64,000 nucleotides of DNA, taken from the IMG/VR virus record IMGVR_UViG_3300031707_000001, positions 1 to 64,000 of that record, one strand, 5' to 3'. The notes under the pieces are model-generated. The model was not told where the DNA came from, did not search any database, and saw only the letters and a list, made by a program, of their open reading frames with translations. A program made the position numbers and the translations under genes. Shown piece by piece: positions 2,773 through 63,874 of this stretch. Positions within the stretch are counted from its first letter, which is position 1. Each line of letters starts with the position of its first letter.

Positions 2773-3195
2773 ATGGCTGATTATTACACAATTTTGAGTT
2801 TCGAGCTAAAGCTTCCGGCAAAAGCTTTGGATTGGATTGAAGCGGAAATTAAGAATGAACAAAGCGAAAAGTTTGAAAATAAGTACGGCAGCATCACAGG
2901 TTGCACCTTTGAACGTGAAGATCCGAAAACGTTGTGGATAAGCAACGACGAAAGTGCCAATGTCAACGCACTATCAGCGGTCATTCAAGCAGCGCTGAAG
3001 AAGTTCAAATTGAACGATAGAGTTGGATTTGAATACGCTTTTACGTGTAGCAAACCACGTTTGGATGCTTTCGGTGGCGGTGCCACAATAGTGACAAAAG
3101 ACGGTTTTGACTACACATCGACATCAATGTGGTTAGACAAAAAAATGAAGCCGCTGCCGTACAGTGTATGCAACAAACCCGATTGGAACTCTTGA
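2773..3195 (+). CDS. Hypothetical protein
   Basis: 140 aa, AAGGAG RBS. Confidence 0.7.
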   Translation: MADYYTILSFELKLPAKALDWIEAEIKNEQSEKFENKYGSITGCTFEREDPKTLWISNDESANVNALSAVIQAALKKFKLNDRVGFEYAFTCSKPRLDAFGGGATIVTKDGFDYTSTSMWLDKKMKPLPYSVCNKPDWNS

Positions 3196-6848: not shown

Positions 6849-7564
6849 TGCAAACAACACTTCTGGATGCCTATATTGGAACCTGTTTGGCCAATAAGGA
6901 TCGACTCCATGTTTGTGGTGCCATGAACGACGTACTACGAACAACTCCTCCGGTTGCTCATATATGGGAGACACCGAACGCTTTGGTAAGACCGTTGGCC
7001 AACGCTCCACTCGTACTACCCGATTCAGCCATGTGCCTGTGCGTCATTCCCAGTATTACGCCAGGATATTATCGATTCTGCGTAGACCAGGATATGGATG
7101 CACCAATTTTGGGGGACTGGATAGGCGGATGTCCTTGGAGTTTGGAAGGCTTACTGGTCTACCAATACGACGACAAAACGTTTGATACTATTCCATTAGT
7201 CCGACAAATGTCTGGTGGAAACTCTGTCATGCCGGAAGTGCAGATGCACTTTACCTTGACACCAGAAGGTTGGATTTGGCAAAAGTCAAAGACTGGACAT
7301 GTCAACTCCTATTTTCACGATGTCATGATACGCATGCTTCCTGACCAGGACAGGCTTGATGATTCTATTGCCTATTTGGGCTCTGTAATCAATGCCTGCC
7401 TGGGTTCATATTTGGACTACATCAATCGTCCGGGAAAATGGCAGATATGTGTGGCACGGGAACCAAAATTGAAACTCAAGAACGGTAAAGTGAAAAAGCT
7501 TTACCGAGAAGGTAGTGTCGGATACAAACAATTCGTACCAGGAGAAACAGATGGCCAACGATAG
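6848..7564 (+). CDS. Hypothetical protein
   Basis: TAATG coupling with upstream stop. Confidence 0.65.
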   Translation: MQTTLLDAYIGTCLANKDRLHVCGAMNDVLRTTPPVAHIWETPNALVRPLANAPLVLPDSAMCLCVIPSITPGYYRFCVDQDMDAPILGDWIGGCPWSLEGLLVYQYDDKTFDTIPLVRQMSGGNSVMPEVQMHFTLTPEGWIWQKSKTGHVNSYFHDVMIRMLPDQDRLDDSIAYLGSVINACLGSYLDYINRPGKWQICVAREPKLKLKNGKVKKLYREGSVGYKQFVPGETDGQR

Positions 7565-7769
7565 ACTGAAACTTCGGCTCGTGATGCCCACAACGGCTGA
7601 CATGGAACTGGTCTCACAGGACGGAGGCACCATTGAGTTGGCGCCAGTATTCTACGGGCCTGCTAGCAGCGGACCACACCTTGTGGTTTTGATGGGCGAC
7701 AAGATTATCTCCAGGTTCAAGTTGATGTTGAAGCCTGACGGCAGACTGGAGTTGAAAAGAGCACTATGA
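7551..7769 (+). CDS. Hypothetical protein
   Basis: AGGAG RBS, ATG 7551. Confidence 0.55.
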   Translation: MANDRLKLRLVMPTTADMELVSQDGGTIELAPVFYGPASSGPHLVVLMGDKIISRFKLMLKPDGRLELKRAL

Positions 7770-10220: not shown

Positions 10221-11251
10221 ACCGAGAACGGCTTTATCGTCTCACACGAGACCGGCTGGGACACGTCCTACCTAATCTACAGGTAAACGGCTGTCTCATG
10301 CTGGCACGTTTACTTTCTGGAGAGCTGAATCGACAATATAGCCATGTGCTGTTTGTTGAGAATGCTCTCCAGGAGGTAGACTATACGCTCGTACAACAAT
10401 GCCAAGGCGCTGGAATGGAATTGGTACAAACCGATTACATTACACCTGACCTGCTGCTGGAACATGGCTGTACAGGAGCCATCCTTTACAACGTAACCAA
10501 CCATCCGGGTCTGGGACAGGCTGTACCGAGTATCTACTATTCATATGGTGTATATGATCCTGATACCAAGTGTGAGCTGGTAGTTCCGTGTTCCAAATTT
10601 GCAGCACGGCACGGACGTCGAGGTCCTTACCCAGAAGTGTTGGATGAAGAATGGATCGTTCCGCCTATGCTGGCTACCCGACCGCTTCGGCGGCTGAAAG
10701 GTGTGTCACATCCATACACTGTTGGAATATATACCAGTGGATCAAATGACAAATATCCCAGTAAACTGGTAATTGAATTGCTGGGCAGTCTACCGGCCGG
10801 CACGGGCATACTGGTAAGCACATTACCCAAATACAGGCATCCGGGCGTACACTTGGCTTTGGAGGGGCGAACTACCAAATACGGTAGTTTAGCTGGCTGC
10901 CCTGTTCGGTTGGATGCAACTGTACCCTATATGATCAATGCAGACTTGGTCATCTATGGATCGGCGCCAGATCATTATGAACCTTATGGTCGTATTGTTG
11001 TAGAAGCCATGGCATTGGGCAAACCTGTGATCTGTGAACGCAAGGGTATTTTCGGGGAAGTCCTGGAGCACGGCGTTAATGCCGTTCTTTATGACACAAC
11101 CGACGACATCCTTAATCTTGTTGAGTGGTTACGTTCAGATACCAATACTGCGACAAAGCTGGGTGTCAATGCACAATTGTGGGCCTCATGGCACGATACG
11201 ACTGTGCATATTGGCAAGCTGAAACGCATTATGAAAATGTTGGGAATATGA
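10217..11251 (+). CDS. GT-B glycosyltransferase (family 4-like)
   Basis: EPYGRIVVEAMALGKPVI signature. Confidence 0.85.
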   Translation: MNRERLYRLTRDRLGHVLPNLQVNGCLMLARLLSGELNRQYSHVLFVENALQEVDYTLVQQCQGAGMELVQTDYITPDLLLEHGCTGAILYNVTNHPGLGQAVPSIYYSYGVYDPDTKCELVVPCSKFAARHGRRGPYPEVLDEEWIVPPMLATRPLRRLKGVSHPYTVGIYTSGSNDKYPSKLVIELLGSLPAGTGILVSTLPKYRHPGVHLALEGRTTKYGSLAGCPVRLDATVPYMINADLVIYGSAPDHYEPYGRIVVEAMALGKPVICERKGIFGEVLEHGVNAVLYDTTDDILNLVEWLRSDTNTATKLGVNAQLWASWHDTTVHIGKLKRIMKMLGI

Positions 11252-41077: not shown

Positions 41078-41446
41078 GGGGCTGTCACGGTGTCGACTCA
41101 GGGATGAGCGAACCAGTAGCATGCCGTGCAATGCACAGTTGGGCACGTTAAAATCATCCTGTGTACAAGTAAGTGGTAACACACTGAAACTCGCTGCCTA
41201 GCAATAGGCAACTAGGAAACCGGGCGACTCCGATAGCCCGGGAGTACGACTATTCATCGGAAACCACAGGTGAGGCTGGACCCTGAGAATAATCCAGACC
41301 AGGTTGTCTGACCTGGTTGAAAAAACAGACTGGTGGACGTGCTAGGAAACTGGCGCCCCCTCGGTTGCTGGACCTAAACCAGATAAGCATGTAGTTGCTG
41401 TTAGCAAACTCTGAACACGGGAGTTCAACTCTCCCCAGCTCCACCA
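41078..41446 (+). ncRNA. ssrA: tmRNA; tag ORF 41175-41201 GNTLKLAA*
   Basis: GGGGCTG/CAGCTCC-A-CCA with G3.U70, T arm, GCATGC/GCATGT helix, GTAAGT resume context. Confidence 0.93.
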
Positions 41447-41452
41447 TTTTTT

Positions 41453-41761
41453 GAGGACAGTATTCGGTGAATGGATACCGATATAACTTGGGGTATCAAT
41501 CCTGTGACAAGTATCATTGTGGTTCTAGGTGCGTGTTTGTAGGATTCATGCCAAGCTATCCTGCATCATGTGGACTTAACTGCATTAGAGAAAGGACACA
41601 GTTAGGAAAGCCAAGTTGAACAATGTTATACGCCTTCAGGTAGGCGCTGGATAGGGTTATAAATAAGCAGGCACCGAATCCAGAAGCCACTGCGCAACGG
41701 ATTTCCAATCCTCAGCGTTGTTGACACCCGAAAGTTCCAGGTTCGATTCCTGGCTGTCCTC
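41453..41761 (+). ncRNA. Large tRNA-like RNA with a ~245-nt insert in place of the anticodon loop
   Basis: GAGGACAG/CTGTCCTC acceptor, CCAGG-TTCGATT-CCTGG T arm, TCGGT/ACCGA D-like arm, TTGGG/CCCGA stem. Confidence 0.65.
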
Positions 41762-43360: not shown

Positions 43361-44809
43361 GTGTCTGAAGATCTTGAAAGAATGAGCCGGCCGCAACTGG
43401 TAAAAGTCATCAAAGATATGCAGACGGAGCTGGATCAGATATCCAGTGACGTCTCAGTAAAGCGGGGAACGTCAGATATCGTCCTTCCGAACAATATGAG
43501 CTACGATGAGGCCATCGAATGGCTCTATCGGAAGAAGGAAGAAGACGAGACTGTCGTGGACCTGCAGCACCAAATCCAATGTCACCCGCTGGACGGGGCA
43601 TATGCCTTATTGAAGGCTATTCAGAAACGCTTTGGCTGGGCCAACATGATTCCCACTCCGGGATTCTTTGGTCCGACGCCACCGAGTATGATCACAATGC
43701 GTGTGGGTCCTGAAGAGAGTGATACGGTTATGGTGCCCTGGGGGCACATGCAGATTCCCGGTTTTGCCGGCATCATCTACGTTGACTACCAGGCGGTTGA
43801 TTCAATACCGGCATTTGTTATCGGCGCCAGCACCAAGAAGAAGGATCAGGCCAAGTTCTATGAACTGGCCAAGCTGGCACAGCACTTCGTGGAGACGGAA
43901 TCCGTCTACCACCGCAAAGCCCTGAGCATGAAGCTCGACTGGGTCAGGGAAGGACGCAAGTTCGATCCCAGAGTCGATGGATTCAAGTTCATCAATTTGA
44001 GTGGGGTCAAAGAGGATCAGCTGATCTTCGATAAAACGACCACTGACATCCTGGAAGCCACACTGTTCTCGTTCATCGAGAACGTGGAGACATGCCGGAA
44101 GCTGCATATCCCGTTGAAGCGTGGTGTATTGCTGGAAGGACCCTATGGCGTTGGCAAGACGTTGACAGCGTACATTACGGCCAAGAAGGCAATTGACAAC
44201 GGATTCACGTTTATCCTCATTGAGGATTCCCGTGATCTGGACAAGATCATCACCATGGCTCGGCGCTATCAGCCGTGTGTTCTCTTCTGTGAGGACATCG
44301 ACCGCATAGTATCGGGACAGCGTGACATTACCGTTGACAGCCTGCTCAATACCATTGACGGGTTGCAGTCGAAGGGTGGTGAGATGATCCTGGTGCTTAC
44401 CAGCAACAACGTGGAGAACATCAATCAGGCCATGCTGCGGCCGGGCCGGCTCGACGCCGTGATTCGGCTGGAGTCTCCTGATGCAGAGGCCGTGGAACGT
44501 TTGATCCGGTATTATGCTGGGTCGTTGTTGTCGCCCACTTCCAACATCAGTTCGGCAGCAGCCAAGCTGCAGGGTAACATTCCGGCTACAATCCGGGAGG
44601 TTATCGAGCGTGCCAAGATGATAAGTATGACCAAGGGTCGTATGGGCGATGGGTCCATTACCGGTGACGACCTGGACATATCGGCCGAATCCATGAAGCG
44701 TCAACTGCAACTGTTGATTCCGAAGCCTCAGGTGCAGGACAGACTTCAGCTCTTTGGAGCGGTGGTTGGCGAGCACATCGCCGAAGCCATCACAAACTTC
44801 AAGGAATAA
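43361..44809 (+). CDS. AAA+ ATPase (CDC48/FtsH-type module)
   Basis: GPYGVGKT Walker A, LFCEDID Walker B, MLRPGRLD SRH. Confidence 0.9.
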   Translation: MSEDLERMSRPQLVKVIKDMQTELDQISSDVSVKRGTSDIVLPNNMSYDEAIEWLYRKKEEDETVVDLQHQIQCHPLDGAYALLKAIQKRFGWANMIPTPGFFGPTPPSMITMRVGPEESDTVMVPWGHMQIPGFAGIIYVDYQAVDSIPAFVIGASTKKKDQAKFYELAKLAQHFVETESVYHRKALSMKLDWVREGRKFDPRVDGFKFINLSGVKEDQLIFDKTTTDILEATLFSFIENVETCRKLHIPLKRGVLLEGPYGVGKTLTAYITAKKAIDNGFTFILIEDSRDLDKIITMARRYQPCVLFCEDIDRIVSGQRDITVDSLLNTIDGLQSKGGEMILVLTSNNVENINQAMLRPGRLDAVIRLESPDAEAVERLIRYYAGSLLSPTSNISSAAAKLQGNIPATIREVIERAKMISMTKGRMGDGSITGDDLDISAESMKRQLQLLIPKPQVQDRLQLFGAVVGEHIAEAITNFKE

Positions 44810-46120: not shown

Positions 46121-46257
46121 CGGAACGATCGTGAAATCCCTGTTTTGCAGGATAGACAACGTACTGTAAGTGTCAACGGTTGCATACCCAGACGGCCGGC
46201 ATGTCTAGGTGGAGTGGTTCGATTCCACAGGTACACGGAACGTTCGTGAAATCCCTG
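46120..46257 (+). repeat. 23-bp direct repeat (46120-46142, 46235-46257) flanking a degenerate tRNA-like unit
   Basis: ACGGAACG(A/T)TCGTGAAATCCCTG twice; inner unit has a GTGG-TTCGATT-CCAC T arm. Confidence 0.7.
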
Positions 46258-46756: not shown

Positions 46757-47839
46757 ATGAAGAAAGAATCGAAAGATATTATGATCTCGTTCGACACGAC
46801 AGGGAGCATGTACCCCTGTCTGACCCAAGTGCGGCGCAACGTATCCGCCTTGGTAACCCGGTTGTTCAAGGACATTCCGGACCTGCGAATCGGTATTATT
46901 GCTCACGGTGACTACTGTGACAAGAATCTGACGTACATTACGAAGATGCTGGATCTGACCAACGACAAGGATAAGATCGTCCATTTCGTAAACAACGTGG
47001 AAGCTACAGGGGGTGGAGATTCCCCGGAGTGCTACGAGTTTGTGTTGAACCAGGTACGTACGCTGGCTTCCTGGTCAAGTGGCAAGTCGAAGATCCTGAT
47101 CATGATTGGTGACGATGTGGCGCATAGCCCAAGGGAAACGCAGAACTTCAAGAAGCTGGAATGGCAGAACGAGATCGGCCTGATCAAAGAAGCAGGTATC
47201 AAGGTCTATGCCGTGCAGGCGCTGGGACGCAGCCATGCAACCAGTTTCTGGCGTACAATGGCATTTAAGTCGAACGGCTACTACATCACGCTGAATCAGT
47301 TTGCGGACATTCAGCACATGATCACAGCGGCTGGCTACAAGCAGCGGGGTGACAGTTTCCTGCAGGACTATGAAAAGGAACTGATTACCAATGGTGTGAT
47401 GAACCGGGACCTGGATTCAGCGATCGGTACCATGTTGGGACGAGAAACAAGTTCCAGGTTCAAGGTCAGTCGTACTCGCTTGGGTGCTGTGGACAGTGGA
47501 CGTTTTCAGGTTATGGAAGTGGACGAAAGATGTCCCATCAAGGAATTTGTGGAAGCACAAGGTGTTACATTCAAGGTAGGACGTGGATTCTATGAGTTCA
47601 CGAAGTCATCGGTTATTCAGCACTATAAGGAAGTAATCCTGATGGATAACCGGACTGGTGACCTGTTCAGTGGAGACAAAGCCCGGGAGCTGGCTAACAT
47701 TCCGATCGGGGTAACAGCCAAGCTGGGCCCGACACTGGTACCTGGCTACACAGTATTTGTGCAGTCAACATCATATAACCGGGCGCTCATGCCAGGAACG
47801 AAGTTCCTGTACGAGATTCCGGATTGGGAACGAGTTTAG
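46757..47839 (+). CDS. von Willebrand factor A domain protein
   Basis: FDTTGSM (MIDAS), GDYCD, GGGDSPECYE, IGDD. Confidence 0.85.
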   Translation: MKKESKDIMISFDTTGSMYPCLTQVRRNVSALVTRLFKDIPDLRIGIIAHGDYCDKNLTYITKMLDLTNDKDKIVHFVNNVEATGGGDSPECYEFVLNQVRTLASWSSGKSKILIMIGDDVAHSPRETQNFKKLEWQNEIGLIKEAGIKVYAVQALGRSHATSFWRTMAFKSNGYYITLNQFADIQHMITAAGYKQRGDSFLQDYEKELITNGVMNRDLDSAIGTMLGRETSSRFKVSRTRLGAVDSGRFQVMEVDERCPIKEFVEAQGVTFKVGRGFYEFTKSSVIQHYKEVILMDNRTGDLFSGDKARELANIPIGVTAKLGPTLVPGYTVFVQSTSYNRALMPGTKFLYEIPDWERV

Positions 47840-52244: not shown

Positions 52245-52460
52245 ATGGCGTACAAGTTCAATAATGGAACAGGCGCTGTGATTTGTGATCACTGCGGCAT
52301 TACGATTGACGAAGGTCTTAGCTACACGGAATACGAAGAATGTTATGGAAGCGAGCAGAAGAAGGACTACTGCACCAGATGCTTCCACCCGGCAAACCGA
52401 CAGAAAGTTAAGGAGGAATCCGATGGCGAGCGATTTGATAGTGCCCGTTGTGAAGCTTGA
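52245..52460 (+). CDS. Hypothetical Zn-ribbon protein
   Basis: KFNNGTGAVICDHC. Confidence 0.6.
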   Translation: MAYKFNNGTGAVICDHCGITIDEGLSYTEYEECYGSEQKKDYCTRCFHPANRQKVKEESDGERFDSARCEA

Positions 52461-53547
52461 ACAGTTGAGACCTCACCCCAATGCTGACAAGTTGGAGTTG
52501 GTCAACGTATTGGGATACCAGATGTGTGTGCCCAAAGGATTGCACAAGGATGGCGACGTCATGGTGTACTTCCCTGCGGATACACTTATTCCGGCTACGT
52601 GGGCGGATTCTTTTGGCGTACGCAAGTACCTGAAGGGTAAGGATCAGGATCGTGTCGGCCGAATCAAGCTGCGGGGTGAGCCTTCGTTTGGACTGGTAGT
52701 CCAGCCGCCTAAGCTACCTGCTGATGTAAAATTCAATGTTGGCGACAATGTGGCTGACTACTATGGTGCCAAGAAGTACGAGCCGCCGGTTCGTGCTACT
52801 GCCGGCGATGCTGCTGCCCGGGATCCTTTGATCGATCCATTCTTTGAGCAGTTCACGGACGTGCAGAACGGACGTATGTTTACGGATATCTTCGTTGATG
52901 GCGAGGAAGTCATCTGCACGGAGAAGATCCACGGTACCAACTGCAAGGTTGGATGTATTGATGGTAAGCCTGTGGCTGGATCTATGGGCGTACGCAGAAA
53001 GCGTCCAACAAAATTATTTGAAGGTCAGGAAATTCCTTGTAAACTAACTGATGATGCAATTGCTACAAACACCTATTGGTTTCCGTTTAGCCTTCCTGGT
53101 GTTAGAAGCCTCATGTCTGACTTTGCAGAACAGGAAATCAAAGAGCCTGTACTGCTCTACGGAGAAGTATATGGTGGTAGTATACAGAGTCTGGACTACG
53201 GTATACCTAAAGGTAAGGGCTTGGGCTTTCGAGCATTTGGACTCAAAGTCAATGGTAGGTTTTTGGACTGGGACGTTTTCGCAGATACATGTATAAAATA
53301 TGGTGTTAAGATGGTTCCAGTTCTTGGGCGTGGCCCTTTCAGTATGGAGAAGGCCAAACACTATGCAGACGGAACATCTGTTCTTTGGACCGATGCGGGA
53401 GTTAAGGTAGAACATATGCGTGAAGGTTGTGTAATCTATCCGGTCAAGGAACGTGAACACCCGAAGATCGGGCGGGTCATCCTAAAGTATATCGGAACCG
53501 AGTATGAGCTTAGCAAACACAAAGAACAAGACACAAAGGACGTTTGA
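52423..53547 (+). CDS. RNA ligase, DRB0094 family
   Basis: N-terminal OB-like HPNADKLE; motif I TEKIHGTN, YGEVYG, REGCVI, LKYI. Confidence 0.9.
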   Translation: MASDLIVPVVKLEQLRPHPNADKLELVNVLGYQMCVPKGLHKDGDVMVYFPADTLIPATWADSFGVRKYLKGKDQDRVGRIKLRGEPSFGLVVQPPKLPADVKFNVGDNVADYYGAKKYEPPVRATAGDAAARDPLIDPFFEQFTDVQNGRMFTDIFVDGEEVICTEKIHGTNCKVGCIDGKPVAGSMGVRRKRPTKLFEGQEIPCKLTDDAIATNTYWFPFSLPGVRSLMSDFAEQEIKEPVLLYGEVYGGSIQSLDYGIPKGKGLGFRAFGLKVNGRFLDWDVFADTCIKYGVKMVPVLGRGPFSMEKAKHYADGTSVLWTDAGVKVEHMREGCVIYPVKEREHPKIGRVILKYIGTEYELSKHKEQDTKDV

Positions 53548-54718: not shown

Positions 54719-54780
54719 GGGTGCGTAGCTCAGTGGTAGAGCCATGGAAACCGTGGGTTCGAATCCCGCCGCATCCACCG
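54719..54780 (+). ncRNA. Anticodon-less tRNA-Ala-like RNA
   Basis: GGGTGCG/CGCATCC (G3.U70), A73, canonical D and T arms joined by about 9 nt; ends CCG. Confidence 0.75.
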
Positions 54781-55682: not shown

Positions 55683-56375
55683 ATGATCATTGTTGCTGGA
55701 GATATACACGGGGATTTTGGAAGCTTGAATGCCATGATAAACAAGCAGAATCCAGAGATCATTTTGCAATGTGGAGATTTCGGATTTTGGCCCGCTATGC
55801 GTCCACAGGACTTCTACGGACCTACCGGCCACAAAAATGCCAAGCTTCCAATTCCCAGGGTGGGTAAGACCAAGGTATACTGGTGCGATGGAAACCACGA
55901 GGATCATCATTCGTTGATTGCACGTAAGACCAACGAGTTGTGGCCTAACGTATTCTATCAGCCTAGGGCTTCCACACTGCAACTGCCGGACGGTCGCACA
56001 GTGTTGTTTATGGGTGGCGCCGATTCCTACGACAAACCGTATCGGACTCCGAACATAGATTGGTTCCAGGAAGAACTGATTACTCAGGCCGATATGGATC
56101 GGTTGCCCAAGTGCAAAGTGGACATCGTTATAAGTCATACCTGCCCTTGTGAGTTTGTAATGGGAATGGGGCTTGGTTTTGATCTACGGCTTAACGATCC
56201 ATGCCGGCACGCATTGTCTATGATTCTACACGAATACAAGCCAGCGCTCTGGTACTTTGGGCATTGGCACAAAAACATAACATATTACGATAGCGAATGG
56301 GGTTGTCGGTGGACGGCATTAAGCCATACAACCGGCGGAGGGTCTGGCCGCTGGTGGGAGGAACTACGAACATGA
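55683..56375 (+). CDS. Calcineurin-like metallophosphoesterase
   Basis: GDIHG, GDFG, GNHE, SHT and GHWH motifs. Confidence 0.88.
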   Translation: MIIVAGDIHGDFGSLNAMINKQNPEIILQCGDFGFWPAMRPQDFYGPTGHKNAKLPIPRVGKTKVYWCDGNHEDHHSLIARKTNELWPNVFYQPRASTLQLPDGRTVLFMGGADSYDKPYRTPNIDWFQEELITQADMDRLPKCKVDIVISHTCPCEFVMGMGLGFDLRLNDPCRHALSMILHEYKPALWYFGHWHKNITYYDSEWGCRWTALSHTTGGGSGRWWEELRT

Positions 56376-59382: not shown

Positions 59383-59415
59383 ACCTCAGGCGGATGCGTC
59401 ATCCGACAAGGCGGG

Positions 59416-59548
59416 TGCAGGTTCTAATTTAATGTGCGTCGTGGGTTCAATTCCCACTCCGGTCTCCTTCGTACACAAGCCGGGTATTGTGTTCGAAGAG
59501 ACCGGGTAGCTCAGTGGTAGAGCACACAGATTCAACATGAAGCCTGCA
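59416..59548 (+). ncRNA. Circularly permuted tRNA-like RNA (T arm, closed acceptor, then D arm)
   Basis: GTGGG-TTCAATT-CCCAC, TCCGGTC/GACCGGG, TA-GCTC-AGTGGTA-GAGC, TGTG/CACA, TGCAGG/CCTGCA. Confidence 0.78.
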
Positions 59549-59630
59549 ATTCCAGCTCAAGGAGACGAGGAGCCAAATGGATTGTATCCTATGAAGCCTT
59601 CGGGCTGATTAGAAAACATGAAATATCATT

Positions 59631-63642: not shown

Positions 63643-63760
63643 GGCAGGGTAGCTCAGTTGGTAGAGCACGTAATCGTACAGTTTGTATGAACTGGCTACA
63701 GCAACCAAAATTACCCTTATAAGGTCGTGGTCGTGGGTTCGAATCCCACCCCTGCCACCA
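63643..63760 (+). tRNA. tRNA-Ile(UAU) with a 42-nt insert in the anticodon stem (63671-63712)
   Basis: Removing the insert gives CG|ACC-CTTATAA-GGTCG and a canonical cloverleaf with CCA. Confidence 0.8.
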
Positions 63761-63762
63761 AT

Positions 63763-63874
63763 CGGATCGGAGTGTAACGGTAGCACAGCGGTAAATATGT
63801 ACAGATTGTATAATCTGTCTACAGCCATCAAAATGGAACCGCAGGACCAGGTTCAATTCCTGGCGATCCGACCA
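63763..63874 (+). ncRNA. tRNA-like RNA (Pro-like C1-G72/A73) with a 45-nt module replacing the anticodon loop
   Basis: CGGATCG/CGATCCG-A-CCA, D arm, GCGGT/ACCGC, T arm CCAGG-TTCAATT-CCTGG. Confidence 0.78.

What the first reader, a model, noticed from the sequence alone, without database searches (positions are those of the whole stretch)
63643..63874. Two tandem tRNAs carrying the same inserted RNA module in the anticodon arm
Seen: both genes have intact acceptor, D and T arms and CCA. Insert 1 (42 nt, 63671-63712) splits the anticodon stem of an otherwise perfect Ile(UAU); insert 2 (45 nt, 63793-63837) replaces the loop of a Pro-like tRNA. Both share linker, hairpin with TGTAT(G/A) loop, CTACAGC(A/C)A, then AAAAT, with different but fully paired stems (CAGTT/AACTG versus ACAGAT/ATCTGT), which is covariation-like. 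My unverified recollection is that stem-ACAGCAA motifs occur in tRNA-like Y RNAs near TROVE/Ro60 genes. Inference: either a new small tRNA intron class needing nuclease plus the phage RNA ligase (conditional tRNA activation), or tRNA-protein-aptamer chimeras acting as decoys for anticodon nucleases. This is the best candidate for an undescribed system, together with the permuted RNA at 59416.
Basis: partly seen in the sequence, partly recalled or inferred. Interest (0 to 1): 0.88.

Follow-up and report, generated by a model that had tools for sequence, protein, structure and literature searches.

The report
tRNA–Y RNA chimeras beside phage Ro60
Two phage tRNA genes carry in their anticodon arm the small hairpin-plus-CAGCA element that marks the partner RNAs of a Ro60-like RNA-binding protein encoded just downstream, so they are most likely tRNA-shaped Y RNAs, not tRNAs with a new kind of intron.

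Summary
At 63643-63760 and 63763-63874 lie two complete, CCA-ending tRNA-like genes, each with a 42/45-nt insert in the anticodon arm. The insert is an A-rich linker, a 6-7 bp hairpin, 3 nt, then CAGC(A/C) and an A-rich tail.

The same element occurs in tRNA islands of many phages, in several topologies:
- as a hairpin inside tRNAs;
- as a terminal stem around permuted (YrlA-like) or normal-order tRNA-like bodies;
- in small non-tRNA RNAs.

It is genomically tied to a divergent Ro60-like protein (DUF2828/DUF7788, phrog_850). That gene starts about 650 nt downstream of tRNA2, just past the window end. Five more stem+CUGCAGCA RNAs fill the gap. An AlphaFold model of the protein matches only Ro60 structures over its full length.

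The element differs from the published Ro-binding motif (CGAA), and no Rfam family covers it.

An intron reading is unlikely. Many copies leave no anticodon loop if excised, orthologous copies differ in anticodon, and tRNA1 has a Lys-type body.

Best reading: these are a new, non-permuted topology of Y RNA, and the module docks the Ro-like ring. Binding is inferred from genomic linkage, not shown.

The parts
63643..63760 (+). tRNA-like gene 1: Lys-type body, anticodon loop CUUAUAA, encoded CCA, carrying the module
   Evidence: Sequence read. Rfam tRNA 51.9 bits with a 55-nt insertion. Body 83% identical to the window's tRNA-Lys(CUU). 74% identical, insert included, to Eneladusvirus 'tRNA-Lys/tRNA-Pseudo'.
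63671..63712 (+). Insert 1 (42 nt), between nt 28 and 29 of the anticodon stem
   Evidence: Removing it restores a 76-nt cloverleaf.
63679..63694 (+). Module hairpin 1: CAGTT(T)/(G)AACTG, loop GTAT
   Evidence: The helix is supported by covariation across phages.
63696..63711 (+). Single-stranded motif 1: CUA-CAGCA-ACCAAAAU
   Evidence: C, G, C of the CAGCA core are invariant and its last A nearly so in 20 aligned modules.
63763..63874 (+). tRNA-like gene 2: complete acceptor, D and T arms plus CCA, with no anticodon loop
   Evidence: The cloverleaf is the MFE fold. Rfam tRNA only 16.6 bits.
63793..63837 (+). Insert 2 (45 nt), replacing the anticodon loop inside the stem GCGGT/ACCGC
63801..63818 (+). 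Module hairpin 2: ACAGATT/AATCTGT, loop GTAT
63819..63834 (+). Single-stranded motif 2: CUA-CAGCC-AUCAAAAU
   Evidence: The exact GTCTRCAGCM string recurs three more times in the next 640 nt, just outside the window.
59415..59552 (+). Permuted tRNA-like RNA (YrlA-like), a probable further partner RNA of the same protein
   Evidence: Rfam YrlA 35.3 bits, E 1.9e-6, below the gathering score of 69. Order is T arm, acceptor hairpin, D arm, enclosed by a terminal stem.

Best explanation
The two genes are tRNA-shaped Y RNAs. Each is a complete tRNA body with a real acceptor end and an encoded CCA. Its anticodon arm carries the docking module of the phage's own Ro60-like protein: an A-rich linker, a covarying hairpin, 3 nt, CAGCA and an A-rich tail.

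They open an array that runs, all on the + strand: tRNA1, tRNA2, about five small stem+CUGCAGCA RNAs, the Ro-like gene, then a terminator-like hairpin.

Inferred mechanism:
1. The array is transcribed, and the tRNA-processing enzymes (RNase P, 3' trimming) cut out stable RNAs.
2. The Ro-like ring (HEAT-repeat ring plus vWA domain) binds the stem and the adjoining single-stranded CAGCA.
3. The tRNA body then works as the second hand of the RNP. As in other Y RNAs, it would tether the ring to a tRNA-recognising partner, or present a tRNA-like bait.

Given the RNA ligase and phosphoesterase in the same island, the likely setting is tRNA damage and repair or counter-defence.

Shown here: the anatomy, the covariation of the hairpin, the genomic linkage and the Ro60 fold of the protein model.
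Inferred: binding of the module by the protein, expression of the RNAs, and the downstream effect.
For: 1. The module is real and conserved. It occurs twice in the window against 0 expected. A CM-guided alignment of 27 distinct modules from many phages gives:
   - 87% of cells paired, against 62% in shuffles (0 of 500 shuffles as high) and 28-44% in slid controls;
   - compensatory changes in all 7 pairs.

2. A Ro60-like gene sits next door. L049:3379-4983 lies about 650 nt downstream on the same strand.
   - Pfam gives DUF2828 + DUF7788; PHROGs gives phrog_850 'RNA-binding protein', E 1e-82.
   - The AF2 model has pLDDT 77 and pTM 0.74.
   - Its 11 best PDB matches are all Ro60 or Rsr, aligned over full length, E 5e-7 to 1e-4, TM about 0.5. 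The top hit is the Thermus phage phiLo Ro60.
   - The vWA MIDAS residues D-x-S-x-S are invariant.

3. The gap between tRNA2 and that gene holds about five stem + CU(A/G)CAGCA RNAs. All four exact GTCTRCAGCM sites in the 13.5-kb locus fall within 640 nt upstream of the gene.

4. Linkage, starting from the RNA. 61 of the 110 loci fetched by an RNA-only pattern carry a homolog of the protein within the 15 kb or less held for each locus, usually adjacent and on the same strand.

5. Linkage, starting from the protein. Stem-N3-CAGCA RNAs lie directly beside the homologous gene in:
   - Mycobacterium phage Tyson, three RNAs, one hitting Rfam YrlA at E 2e-6;
   - Listeria phage LP-125, three in tandem;
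   - Sinorhizobium phage phiM7, Vibrio phage D479 and Escherichia phage EC6.

6. Published context. Bas63 gp130 belongs to a Felixounavirus, the genus of EC6, and lies directly upstream of the tRNA genes as the EC6 homolog does. It is Ro60-like by structure. Its authors guessed that some 'tRNA genes' are Y RNAs (PMC11482910). Jumbo phages are known to carry TROVE proteins alongside RNA-repair genes (PMC7824862).

7. Module-bearing tRNAs are common in such phages: Eneladusvirus has 3, the L033/L051 jumbo phages at least 4, the L005/L018 gut-phage lineage has 4-5 in a row just before the Ro-like gene, and there are others in L026, L012, L070 and L068.
Against: - No binding, expression or processing data exist for this family of RNAs.
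- The module does not contain the experimentally supported Ro-binding motif (GNCGAAN0-1G / CGAA).
- Rfam YrlA does not recognise the module.
- A covariance model built without the window's copies ranks insert 1 first in the window, but only at 13.4 bits (E 1.3), and it misses insert 2. The model alone therefore does not prove homology.
- The protein does not hit Pfam TROVE, and its Foldseek TM-scores are moderate.
- In Eneladusvirus the Ro-like gene lies far from the module tRNAs, so adjacency is not universal.
- The class A1 copies keep a perfect 7-nt anticodon loop, which a pure docking scaffold would not need.
Confidence: 0.7

Rival explanations
1. The inserts are a new class of small tRNA intron. 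The permuted relatives are permuted tRNA genes. A nuclease cuts on both sides of the module, and the phage RNA ligase (52285-53547) joins the ends. This would yield conditional, functional tRNAs, with the Ro-like ring possibly holding the ends together.
For: - In tRNA1, and in Eneladusvirus, L033 and L005 relatives, precise removal restores a perfect cloverleaf with a canonical U33/R37 loop, often at the same site, 28|29.
- The hairpin form (inside tRNAs) and the split form (around permuted tRNA-like bodies) relate to each other as intron-containing and permuted tRNA genes do in archaea and red algae.
- An RNA ligase and a metallophosphoesterase are encoded in the island. An RtcB gene sits near the homologous protein in Listeria phage LP-125.
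Against: - tRNA2, L070:5624-5727, L005:6751-6876 and L005:6879-6975 would have no anticodon loop after excision.
- The same element flanks bodies with a 3-bp 'acceptor' (L017, L029, L070). It also occurs in small RNAs with no T or D arms.
- The insertion site is not fixed: 31|32 in a third Eneladusvirus copy.
- Orthologous bodies carry different anticodons:
  - Lys body: UUU vs UAU;
  - Glu body: UUC vs UCA;
  - a third body: GUC vs UUC.
- The window already has a canonical Ile(UAU) and a Pro(UGG).
- No bulge-helix-bulge can be drawn at the junctions. The insert is far too small for a group I intron, and Rfam finds none.
- No candidate endonuclease was identified.
Confidence: 0.12
2. The module works without the Ro-like protein. 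It would be a processing, stability or regulatory signal, or a small aptamer or ribozyme, for RNAs of the tRNA island. Its proximity to the Ro-like gene would then reflect only shared location in tRNA islands.
For: - The module is short.
- A loop-to-linker pseudoknot is possible: G12-C31, U13-A30 and a covarying 14-29 pair.
- Ro-like genes and tRNA islands tend to sit together anyway.
- Eneladusvirus shows no adjacency.
Against: - In Tyson, D479, phiM7 (the small RNA at about 2895-2935) and LP-125, the RNAs abut the gene itself rather than a tRNA array.
- 61 of 110 pattern-fetched loci carry the gene, while only 686 of 50,697 phage records have a homolog at all.
- Rfam's ribozyme and riboswitch families give no hit at E up to 10.
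- Pseudoknot support is weak: 62% paired, and two of the three pairs show no covariation.
Confidence: 0.12
3. The two genes are decaying pseudo-tRNAs disrupted by a small mobile DNA element (MITE or IS200/IS605-like hairpin), with no function.
For: - GenBank annotators called the Eneladusvirus homolog 'tRNA-Pseudo'.
- tRNA2 lacks an anticodon loop and has G at position 8.
Against: - The hairpin covaries while the flanking motif is conserved across very distant phages.
- The element also exists split, with its two strands 60-150 nt apart around structured RNA. A DNA hairpin element cannot explain that.
- The acceptor, D and T arms and the CCA are all intact.
Confidence: 0.04

Closest known systems
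YrlA (bacterial and mycobacteriophage Y RNA with a tRNA-like domain; Rfam RF02553; Chen et al. 2014, PMC4201824)
   Same: - A small RNA encoded next to a Ro60-family gene, on the same strand.
- It combines a protein-docking stem with a T arm, a D arm and an acceptor-like stem.
- M. smegmatis YrlA is even cut by RNase P and receives CCA.
- The window holds a YrlA-like RNA of its own at 59415-59552.
   Different: - In YrlA the tRNA-like domain is circularly permuted: the RNA ends lie in the docking stem and the acceptor is closed by a loop.
- Here the acceptor end is open with an encoded CCA, the docking stem is closed by a loop, and it sits inside or in place of the anticodon arm.
- The conserved motif is stem-N3-CAGCA, not GNCGAAN0-1G.
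- Rfam YrlA does not score the module.
[quoted passage not shown]
Deinococcus radiodurans Yrn1 and Thermus phage phiLo Yrl1/Yrl2 with their Ro60 (PMC4201824, PMC12135203)
   Same: - Ro60 ring plus a stem-bulge RNA.
- phiLo shows that phage Ro60 proteins bind phage-encoded Y-like RNAs and can engage host PNPase.
- Yrn1 has the normal D-anticodon-T order with its ends at the acceptor side, like the 'class B' relatives found here (L017, L070).
   Different: - Those RNAs use the CGAA or GGUCCGA-like motif.
- They are not full tRNAs.
- Their proteins are recognisable TROVE proteins, whereas the protein here hits DUF2828/DUF7788 only.
Bas63 gp130 (Felixounavirus Ro60-like protein; PhageMaP preprint, PMC11482910)
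   Same: - Probably the same protein family. This is my inference: the EC6 Felixounavirus homolog is 31% identical to the window contig's protein and sits directly upstream of the tRNA island.
- The authors speculate that some annotated tRNA genes are Y RNAs.
- gp130 counters the Ppl defence system.
   Different: - No RNA partner, motif or structure was described there.
- The RNAs I find in EC6 are split-stem and permuted forms, not tRNAs with an inserted hairpin.
tRNA introns and permuted tRNA genes (archaeal/eukaryal bulge-helix-bulge introns; bacterial group I introns; the 'enigmatic introns' of Lak megaphage tRNAs, PMC6784885)
   Same: - Extra sequence in the anticodon arm of an otherwise normal tRNA gene.
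- Hairpin and split forms mirror intron-containing and permuted genes.
   Different: - No bulge-helix-bulge and no group I core.
- Many copies cannot give a decoding tRNA.
- Linkage is to a Ro60-like gene, not to a splicing endonuclease.
- Whether the Lak introns are the same element was not tested.

Membership tests
Y RNA / YrlA (Ro60 partner RNAs) | Encoded close to a Ro60-family gene and on the same strand | tested here: met
   The Ro60-like gene L049:3379-4983 starts about 650 nt after tRNA2, on the same strand. The same linkage is seen in 61 of 110 RNA-fetched loci, and in 5 of 6 phages examined starting from the protein.
Y RNA / YrlA (Ro60 partner RNAs) | Conserved Ro-binding motif GNCGAAN0-1G / CGAA (GGUCCGA in animals) in a bulged terminal helix | tested here: not met
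   The module has stem-N3-CAGC(A/C) instead. The published motif is taken from PMC4201824 and PMC12135203.
Y RNA / YrlA (Ro60 partner RNAs) | The 5' and 3' ends pair to form the docking stem, and the tRNA-like domain is permuted (T arm, acceptor hairpin, D arm) | tested here: not met
   Both window genes have the normal tRNA order, an open acceptor end with CCA and a closed docking hairpin. Relatives elsewhere do have the YrlA topology, as does window 59415-59552.
Y RNA / YrlA (Ro60 partner RNAs) | Score at or above the Rfam RF02553 gathering score (69 bits) | tested here: not met
   The only hit is 14.8 bits and spans the tRNA1/tRNA2 junction. Even the mycobacteriophage and window YrlA-like RNAs reach only 36.4 and 35.3 bits.
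Y RNA / YrlA (Ro60 partner RNAs) | Physically bound by the Ro60 protein | not testable with these tools
   Needs RIP/CLIP or EMSA.
tRNA (RF00005) | Cloverleaf with acceptor, D, anticodon and T arms that passes the covariance model | tested here: inconclusive
   tRNA1 scores 51.9 bits, but only with a 55-nt insertion. tRNA2 scores 16.6 bits, below the threshold of 29. ARAGORN calls neither.
tRNA (RF00005) | An anticodon consistent with the body, as expected of a decoding tRNA | tested here: not met
   tRNA1 has a Lys-type body with UAU. tRNA2 has no anticodon loop. Orthologous module tRNAs differ in anticodon.
Bulge-helix-bulge tRNA introns / permuted tRNA genes | Two 3-nt bulges separated by a 4-bp helix at the exon-intron junctions | tested here: not met
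   By inspection. The insert interrupts one strand only, and the only pairing across the junctions is a continuous GUAAU/AUUAC helix without bulges.
Group I tRNA introns | A P1-P9 catalytic core of about 200 nt or more in the anticodon loop | tested here: not met
   The inserts are 42 and 45 nt, and there is no Rfam intron hit at E up to 10.
Ro60 / TROVE protein family (for the neighbouring gene) | Ring of HEAT-like helical repeats followed by a vWA domain with a MIDAS site | tested here: met
   The AF2 model (pLDDT 77) has as its top 11 Foldseek hits Ro60 or Rsr over full length; the next hits are vWA domains only. D333, S335 and S337 are invariant.
Ro60 / TROVE protein family (for the neighbouring gene) | Match to the Pfam TROVE domain, or significant sequence similarity to solved Ro60 proteins | tested here: not met
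   Pfam gives only DUF2828 + DUF7788. phmmer against the PDB finds nothing. A profile search gives Ro60 at E 0.09-1.1, over the vWA part only.

The most novel reading that the evidence does not exclude
The module is the recognition element of a protein-guided tRNA maturation system in phages. The Ro-like ring would clamp the stem-CAGCA element. A nuclease would cut on both sides, and the phage RNA ligase would join the ends. Intron-bearing genes (hairpin form) and permuted genes (split-stem form) would both mature into working tRNAs, possibly only when host tRNAs are under attack. That would be a bacterial-virus counterpart of archaeal tRNA splicing, built from unrelated parts.
Probability: 0.08. 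Interest if true: 0.92.

Novelty: new variant of a known kind. Interest (0 to 1): 0.66.

Why it matters
Ro60 and its Y RNAs are conserved from bacteria to humans, yet nobody knows what the tRNA-like half of bacterial Y RNAs is for.

This locus, and the family it led to, give three concrete handles on that question:
1. A sequence signature (covarying stem, 3 nt, CAGCA, A-rich tail) marks the partner RNAs of a large, divergent Ro60-like family. Homologs of the protein occur in 686 of about 50,700 phage records. They include Felixounavirus, Pecentumvirus, cluster-L-type mycobacteriophages, vibriophages and jumbo phages.
2. The signature can be grafted onto a complete, CCA-ending tRNA. The tRNA half may therefore be chargeable or recognisable as a real tRNA.
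3. Orthologous chimeras change their anticodon. That is expected of bait or decoys in an arms race, not of decoding tRNAs.

Practical consequences:
- Many 'tRNA-Pseudo', 'tRNA-OTHER' and over-long tRNA annotations in phage genomes are probably Y RNAs.
- 'tRNA introns' reported in phages should be re-examined.
- A Felixounavirus Ro60-like protein already counters a defence system, so the RNAs are candidate cofactors of a phage counter-defence RNP.

Tried and rejected
- **Rfam.** Searches of the region at E up to 10 give no riboswitch, ribozyme or sRNA family for the module. Thirteen related loci give only tRNAs at gathering scores.
- **Canonical Y-RNA motif.** The published Ro-binding motif is CGAA-type, not CAGCA, so membership in YrlA is not claimed.
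- **tmRNA-like coding reading.** The stretch after CAGCA has an open frame ending in the 'anticodon loop' in L070, but no such frame exists in the window. Rejected.
- **DNA-level hairpin element (IS200/IS605, MITE).** Rejected, because the stem also exists as two strands far apart around structured RNA.
- **Loop-to-linker pseudoknot.** 62% of cells pair, and only one of the three pairs covaries. Inconclusive.
- **Leave-out covariance model.** A model built without the window's copies finds insert 1 as the top hit, but at 13.4 bits (E 1.3), and misses insert 2. The module is too short and too lineage-specific for a CM alone.
- **Fixed-register hairpin test.** 15 of 26 sequence groups are perfect, against 12% at random positions. 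The candidate list includes some spurious entries.
- **Sequence searches of the protein.** No PDB hit by phmmer and no NCBIfam family.
- **Literature on DUF2828.** Nothing relevant. One search was wasted on the word 'trove'.
- **Promoters.** No sigma-70-like promoter stands out near the array.
- **Yersinia phage fHe-Yen9-04.** No stem+CAGCA RNA next to the Ro-like gene.
Full report
**1. The observation**

The window is a phage tRNA island. ARAGORN finds 27 tRNAs and a tmRNA.

At its right end lie two head-to-tail tRNA-like genes that ARAGORN does not call.
- Gene 1 (63643-63760) has a 7-bp acceptor stem, D arm, T arm, A73 and CCA. A 42-nt insert (63671-63712) sits between nt 28 and 29 of an otherwise perfect anticodon stem whose loop is CUUAUAA.
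- Gene 2 (63763-63874) has the same intact arms and CCA. Its 5-bp 'anticodon stem' encloses 45 nt (63793-63837) and no anticodon loop.

Both inserts share a 36-nt module: an A-rich linker, a hairpin, CUA, CAGC(A/C), then an A-rich tail ending in AAAAU. The module occurs exactly twice in 64 kb, with none expected by chance. The two hairpins differ by a compensatory pair.

Rfam's tRNA model accepts gene 1 at 51.9 bits with a 55-nt insertion. Gene 2 reaches only 16.6 bits. The description is therefore accurate.

Two details need correcting:
- Without its insert, gene 1 is closest to the window's tRNA-Lys(CUU) (83%), not to its tRNA-Ile(UAU) (72%).
- Gene 2 has no convincing Pro identity.

**2. 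Relatives**

A distant BLAST of the region hit only Eneladusvirus jumbo phages (Serratia phage BF and Erwinia phages). The match, 74% identical, runs through the insert. GenBank calls that gene 'tRNA-Pseudo' or 'tRNA-Lys'.

That phage has three such genes. Each has a linker, a hairpin of different sequence, and UUACAGCAAC / UUACGGCAUC / UAACAGCAUU:
- a Lys-UUU gene with the insert at 28|29;
- a Glu-UUC gene with the insert at 28|29;
- a Tyr-like gene with the insert at 31|32.

I scanned IMG/VR for TACAGC-N4-A-N-AA followed by a T arm.

In them the element appears in four topologies:
- **A1:** a hairpin inserted in the anticodon stem.
- **A2:** a hairpin replacing the anticodon loop or the whole arm.
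- **P:** stem strand, motif, anticodon-like hairpin, T arm, acceptor hairpin, D arm, partner strand. This is the permuted order of YrlA.
- **B:** stem strand, motif, 3-bp acceptor, D, anticodon and T arms, A-rich linker, partner strand.

The hairpin and split forms are circular permutations of one another. In every case the motif follows the 3' end of one stem strand.

**3. Is the hairpin a selected structure?**

I aligned 20 hairpin-type modules. The C, G and C of the CAGCA core are invariant and its last A is nearly so. A covariance model built from them found 35 copies in 39 sources.

On that alignment (27 distinct rows) the 7-bp helix behaves as follows:
- 87% of cells pair, against 62% in column shuffles (0 of 500 shuffles as high) and 28-44% when the partner column is slid.
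- All seven pairs show changes on both sides.
- The covariation score is 0.70, against 0.25 in shuffles.

One caveat: the alignment is fitted to the model.

A stricter test was weak. A model built without the window's copies ranks insert 1 first in the window, but at 13.4 bits (E 1.3), and it misses insert 2. Homology of the window's copies therefore rests on other evidence:
- the BLAST-level similarity of gene 1 to the Eneladusvirus gene;
- the identical geometry;
- the local context described next.

**4. The neighbour**

The window ends 126 nt after gene 2. The same contig is in IMG/VR (L049, 210.7 kb; window 63643 = L049 2477).

About 650 nt downstream, on the same strand, is a 534-aa ORF (L049:3379-4983) with Pfam DUF2828 and DUF7788. 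It belongs to phrog_850, 'RNA-binding protein'.

Structural evidence on the protein:
- Sequence searches of the PDB are not significant.
- An AlphaFold model from a 14-sequence alignment has pLDDT 77 and pTM 0.74.
- Its 11 best PDB matches are exclusively Ro60 or Rsr structures aligned over the full length: Thermus phage phiLo, human, Xenopus and Deinococcus (E 5e-7 to 1e-4, TM about 0.5). After them come isolated vWA domains.
- The MIDAS residues D-x-S-x-S are invariant.

tblastn finds homologs in 686 phage records. In mycobacteriophages they are annotated 'Ro-like RNA binding protein'.

The 650-nt gap between gene 2 and this ORF is not empty. It holds about five small RNAs of the form stem strand, CU(A/G)CAGCA..., small hairpin, partner strand.

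All four exact GTCTRCAGCM sites in the 13.5-kb locus lie in the 640 nt before the ORF. The 64-kb window has only the one in insert 2. A strong terminator-like hairpin follows the ORF.

**5. Generality of the linkage**

Starting from the RNA: 61 of the 110 loci fetched purely by the RNA pattern contain a homolog of the protein within the 15 kb or less held. It is typically adjacent and on the same strand. For example, in L005 the RNA ends at 7480 and the gene starts at 7662; in L018 the corresponding positions are 1860 and 1865.

Starting from the protein:
- Mycobacterium phage Tyson has three stem + (A/G)CAGCAAU RNAs in the 368-nt gap after its Ro-like gene. The middle one hits Rfam YrlA at E 2e-6.
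- Listeria phage LP-125 has three in tandem directly upstream of its 'DUF2828' gene, with an RtcB ligase 1.3 kb further on.
- Sinorhizobium phage phiM7 and Vibrio phage D479 each have one abutting the gene. phiM7 also has a permuted tRNA-like copy.
- Escherichia phage EC6 (Felixounavirus) has four in the tRNA island that starts right after the gene.
- Only Yersinia phage fHe-Yen9-04 (Eneladusvirus) shows none beside the gene. In the related Eneladusvirus BF the module-bearing tRNAs sit in the tRNA region near position 296,000, whereas the fHe-Yen9-04 Ro-like gene lies near 102,000.

In the L005/L018 gut-phage lineage, four or five module-bearing tRNA-likes stand in a row just before a class-B RNA and the Ro-like gene.

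**6. What is known**

- Chen et al. 2014 (PMC4201824) defined YrlA as a Ro60-adjacent RNA with a permuted tRNA-like domain. They named GNCGAAN0-1G as the likely Ro-binding motif. [quoted passage not shown]
- The phiLo study (PMC12135203) showed a phage Ro60 binding two phage Y-like RNAs through CGAA and engaging host PNPase.
- The PhageMaP preprint (PMC11482910) found that Bas63 gp130 is Ro60-like by structure, lies directly upstream of the tRNA genes and counters the Ppl defence. Its authors guessed that some tRNA genes might be Y RNAs.
- Iyer et al. 2021 (PMC7824862) noted TROVE proteins with RNA-repair genes in some jumbo phages.

In the library available to me, I found no description of the stem-N3-CAGCA signature or of Ro-partner modules inserted into complete tRNAs. 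That library is incomplete, so this is absence of evidence only.

**7. Interpretation**

The most economical reading is that genes 1 and 2 are Y RNAs of a third topology. The tRNA body keeps its natural ends and CCA. The docking stem, closed by a loop, is grafted into the anticodon arm.

The docking role of the module is inferred from linkage, by analogy with Ro60 and Y RNA. It has not been shown.

What the tRNA half does is unknown. Several things point to tRNA damage, repair or counter-defence, but this is inference:
- the RNA ligase (52285-53547) and the metallophosphoesterase (55683-56375) in the island;
- RtcB next to the homolog in LP-125;
- the anti-Ppl phenotype of Bas63 gp130;
- the fact that orthologous chimeras change their anticodon (Lys body UUU vs UAU; Glu body UUC vs UCA; another body GUC vs UUC).

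**8. Rivals**

- *Intron.* It is attractive for the A1 copies, which would splice to perfect cloverleaves. It fails for gene 2 and all A2 and B copies, and for the small non-tRNA RNAs. The insertion site varies and the anticodons are unstable. There is no bulge-helix-bulge or group I core, and I found no endonuclease. I leave it at about 0.12, including the variant in which the Ro-like ring assists splicing.
- *Ro-independent signal or aptamer.* It cannot be excluded without binding data (about 0.12).
- *Pseudogenes hit by a mobile DNA hairpin.* This is contradicted by the covariation and by the split forms (about 0.04).

**9. Verdict**

It is not a member of YrlA as that family is defined: the motif differs, the topology differs, and it falls below the Rfam threshold. 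It works like a Y RNA. I rate it a new variant of a known kind.

Its interest lies in three things. It gives a searchable RNA signature for a large phage Ro60-like family. It shows that the signature is mounted on full tRNAs. And it makes the role of the tRNA-like half of Y RNAs experimentally approachable.

Noticed in passing
window 59415-59552 (+): A permuted tRNA-like RNA: T arm, an acceptor hairpin with a 32-nt extra hairpin, then a D arm, all enclosed by a terminal stem. It hits Rfam YrlA at 35.3 bits, E 1.9e-6, below the gathering score. It has no CAGCA after the 5' stem strand.
   Followed up: partly
window 54719-54777 (+): A tRNA-like gene with acceptor, D and T arms but no anticodon arm; 9 nt replace it. 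Rfam tRNA scores it at 48.4 bits, and ARAGORN misses it.
   Followed up: no
window 41078-41446 (+): A phage-encoded tmRNA (Rfam 82.7 bits) with the tag peptide GNTLKLAA.
   Followed up: no
window 41740-41750 and 46216-46226 (+): Two more perfect T-arm motifs outside any called tRNA. The one at 46216 lies between two direct repeats of about 25 nt (ACGGAACG.TCGTGAAATCCCTG).
   Followed up: no
window 52285-53547, 55683-56375, 43361-44809, 46757-47839 (+): Four genes embedded in the tRNA island: an RNA ligase (PF09414 plus PHA02142 OB domain), a calcineurin-like phosphoesterase, an AAA ATPase and a separate vWA-domain protein. This looks like an RNA-repair-type gene set.
   Followed up: partly
L049:2888-3335 (just beyond the window end; window-equivalent about 64054-64501): About five tandem small RNAs, each a stem strand, CU(A/G)CAGCA..., a small hairpin and the partner strand. 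Two variants have CUGCAAAC and ACCGCAAC cores. They fill the gap before the Ro-like gene.
   Followed up: partly
L033 (rc) 711-821, 2682-2797 and 10717-10835; L051 (rc) 1206-1321; L001:1361-1475 and 3010-3130: Orthologous module-bearing tRNAs in related jumbo phages keep their bodies but differ in anticodon: Glu-type body UUC vs UCA, and another body GUC vs UUC. The Lys-type body keeps UUU in L001 and L033 but has UAU in the window. Decoding is apparently not what is conserved.
   Followed up: partly
L116 (Listeria phage LP-125) 2590-2870, 2932-4455, 5786-6997: Three tandem stem-UAA-CAGCAAUUAC RNAs, then the DUF2828 gene, then an RtcB-like ligase. This resembles the Salmonella rsr-yrlBA-rtcBA arrangement, in a Gram-positive phage.
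   Followed up: partly
L005:6304-7480 and the equivalent stretch in L018: In a gut-phage lineage, four to five module-bearing tRNA-likes stand in a row immediately before the Ro-like gene. Their hairpin tops share a conserved CAUGUU.GUG sequence.
   Followed up: partly
alignment A4, columns 12-14 with 29-31: A possible 3-bp pseudoknot between the hairpin loop (GU.) and the 3 nt before CAGCA plus its C. One of the pairs covaries, and 62% of cells pair overall.
   Followed up: partly
literature (PMC6784885): Lak megaphages were reported to have tRNAs with 'enigmatic', highly conserved introns. I did not check whether these are the same module.
   Followed up: no
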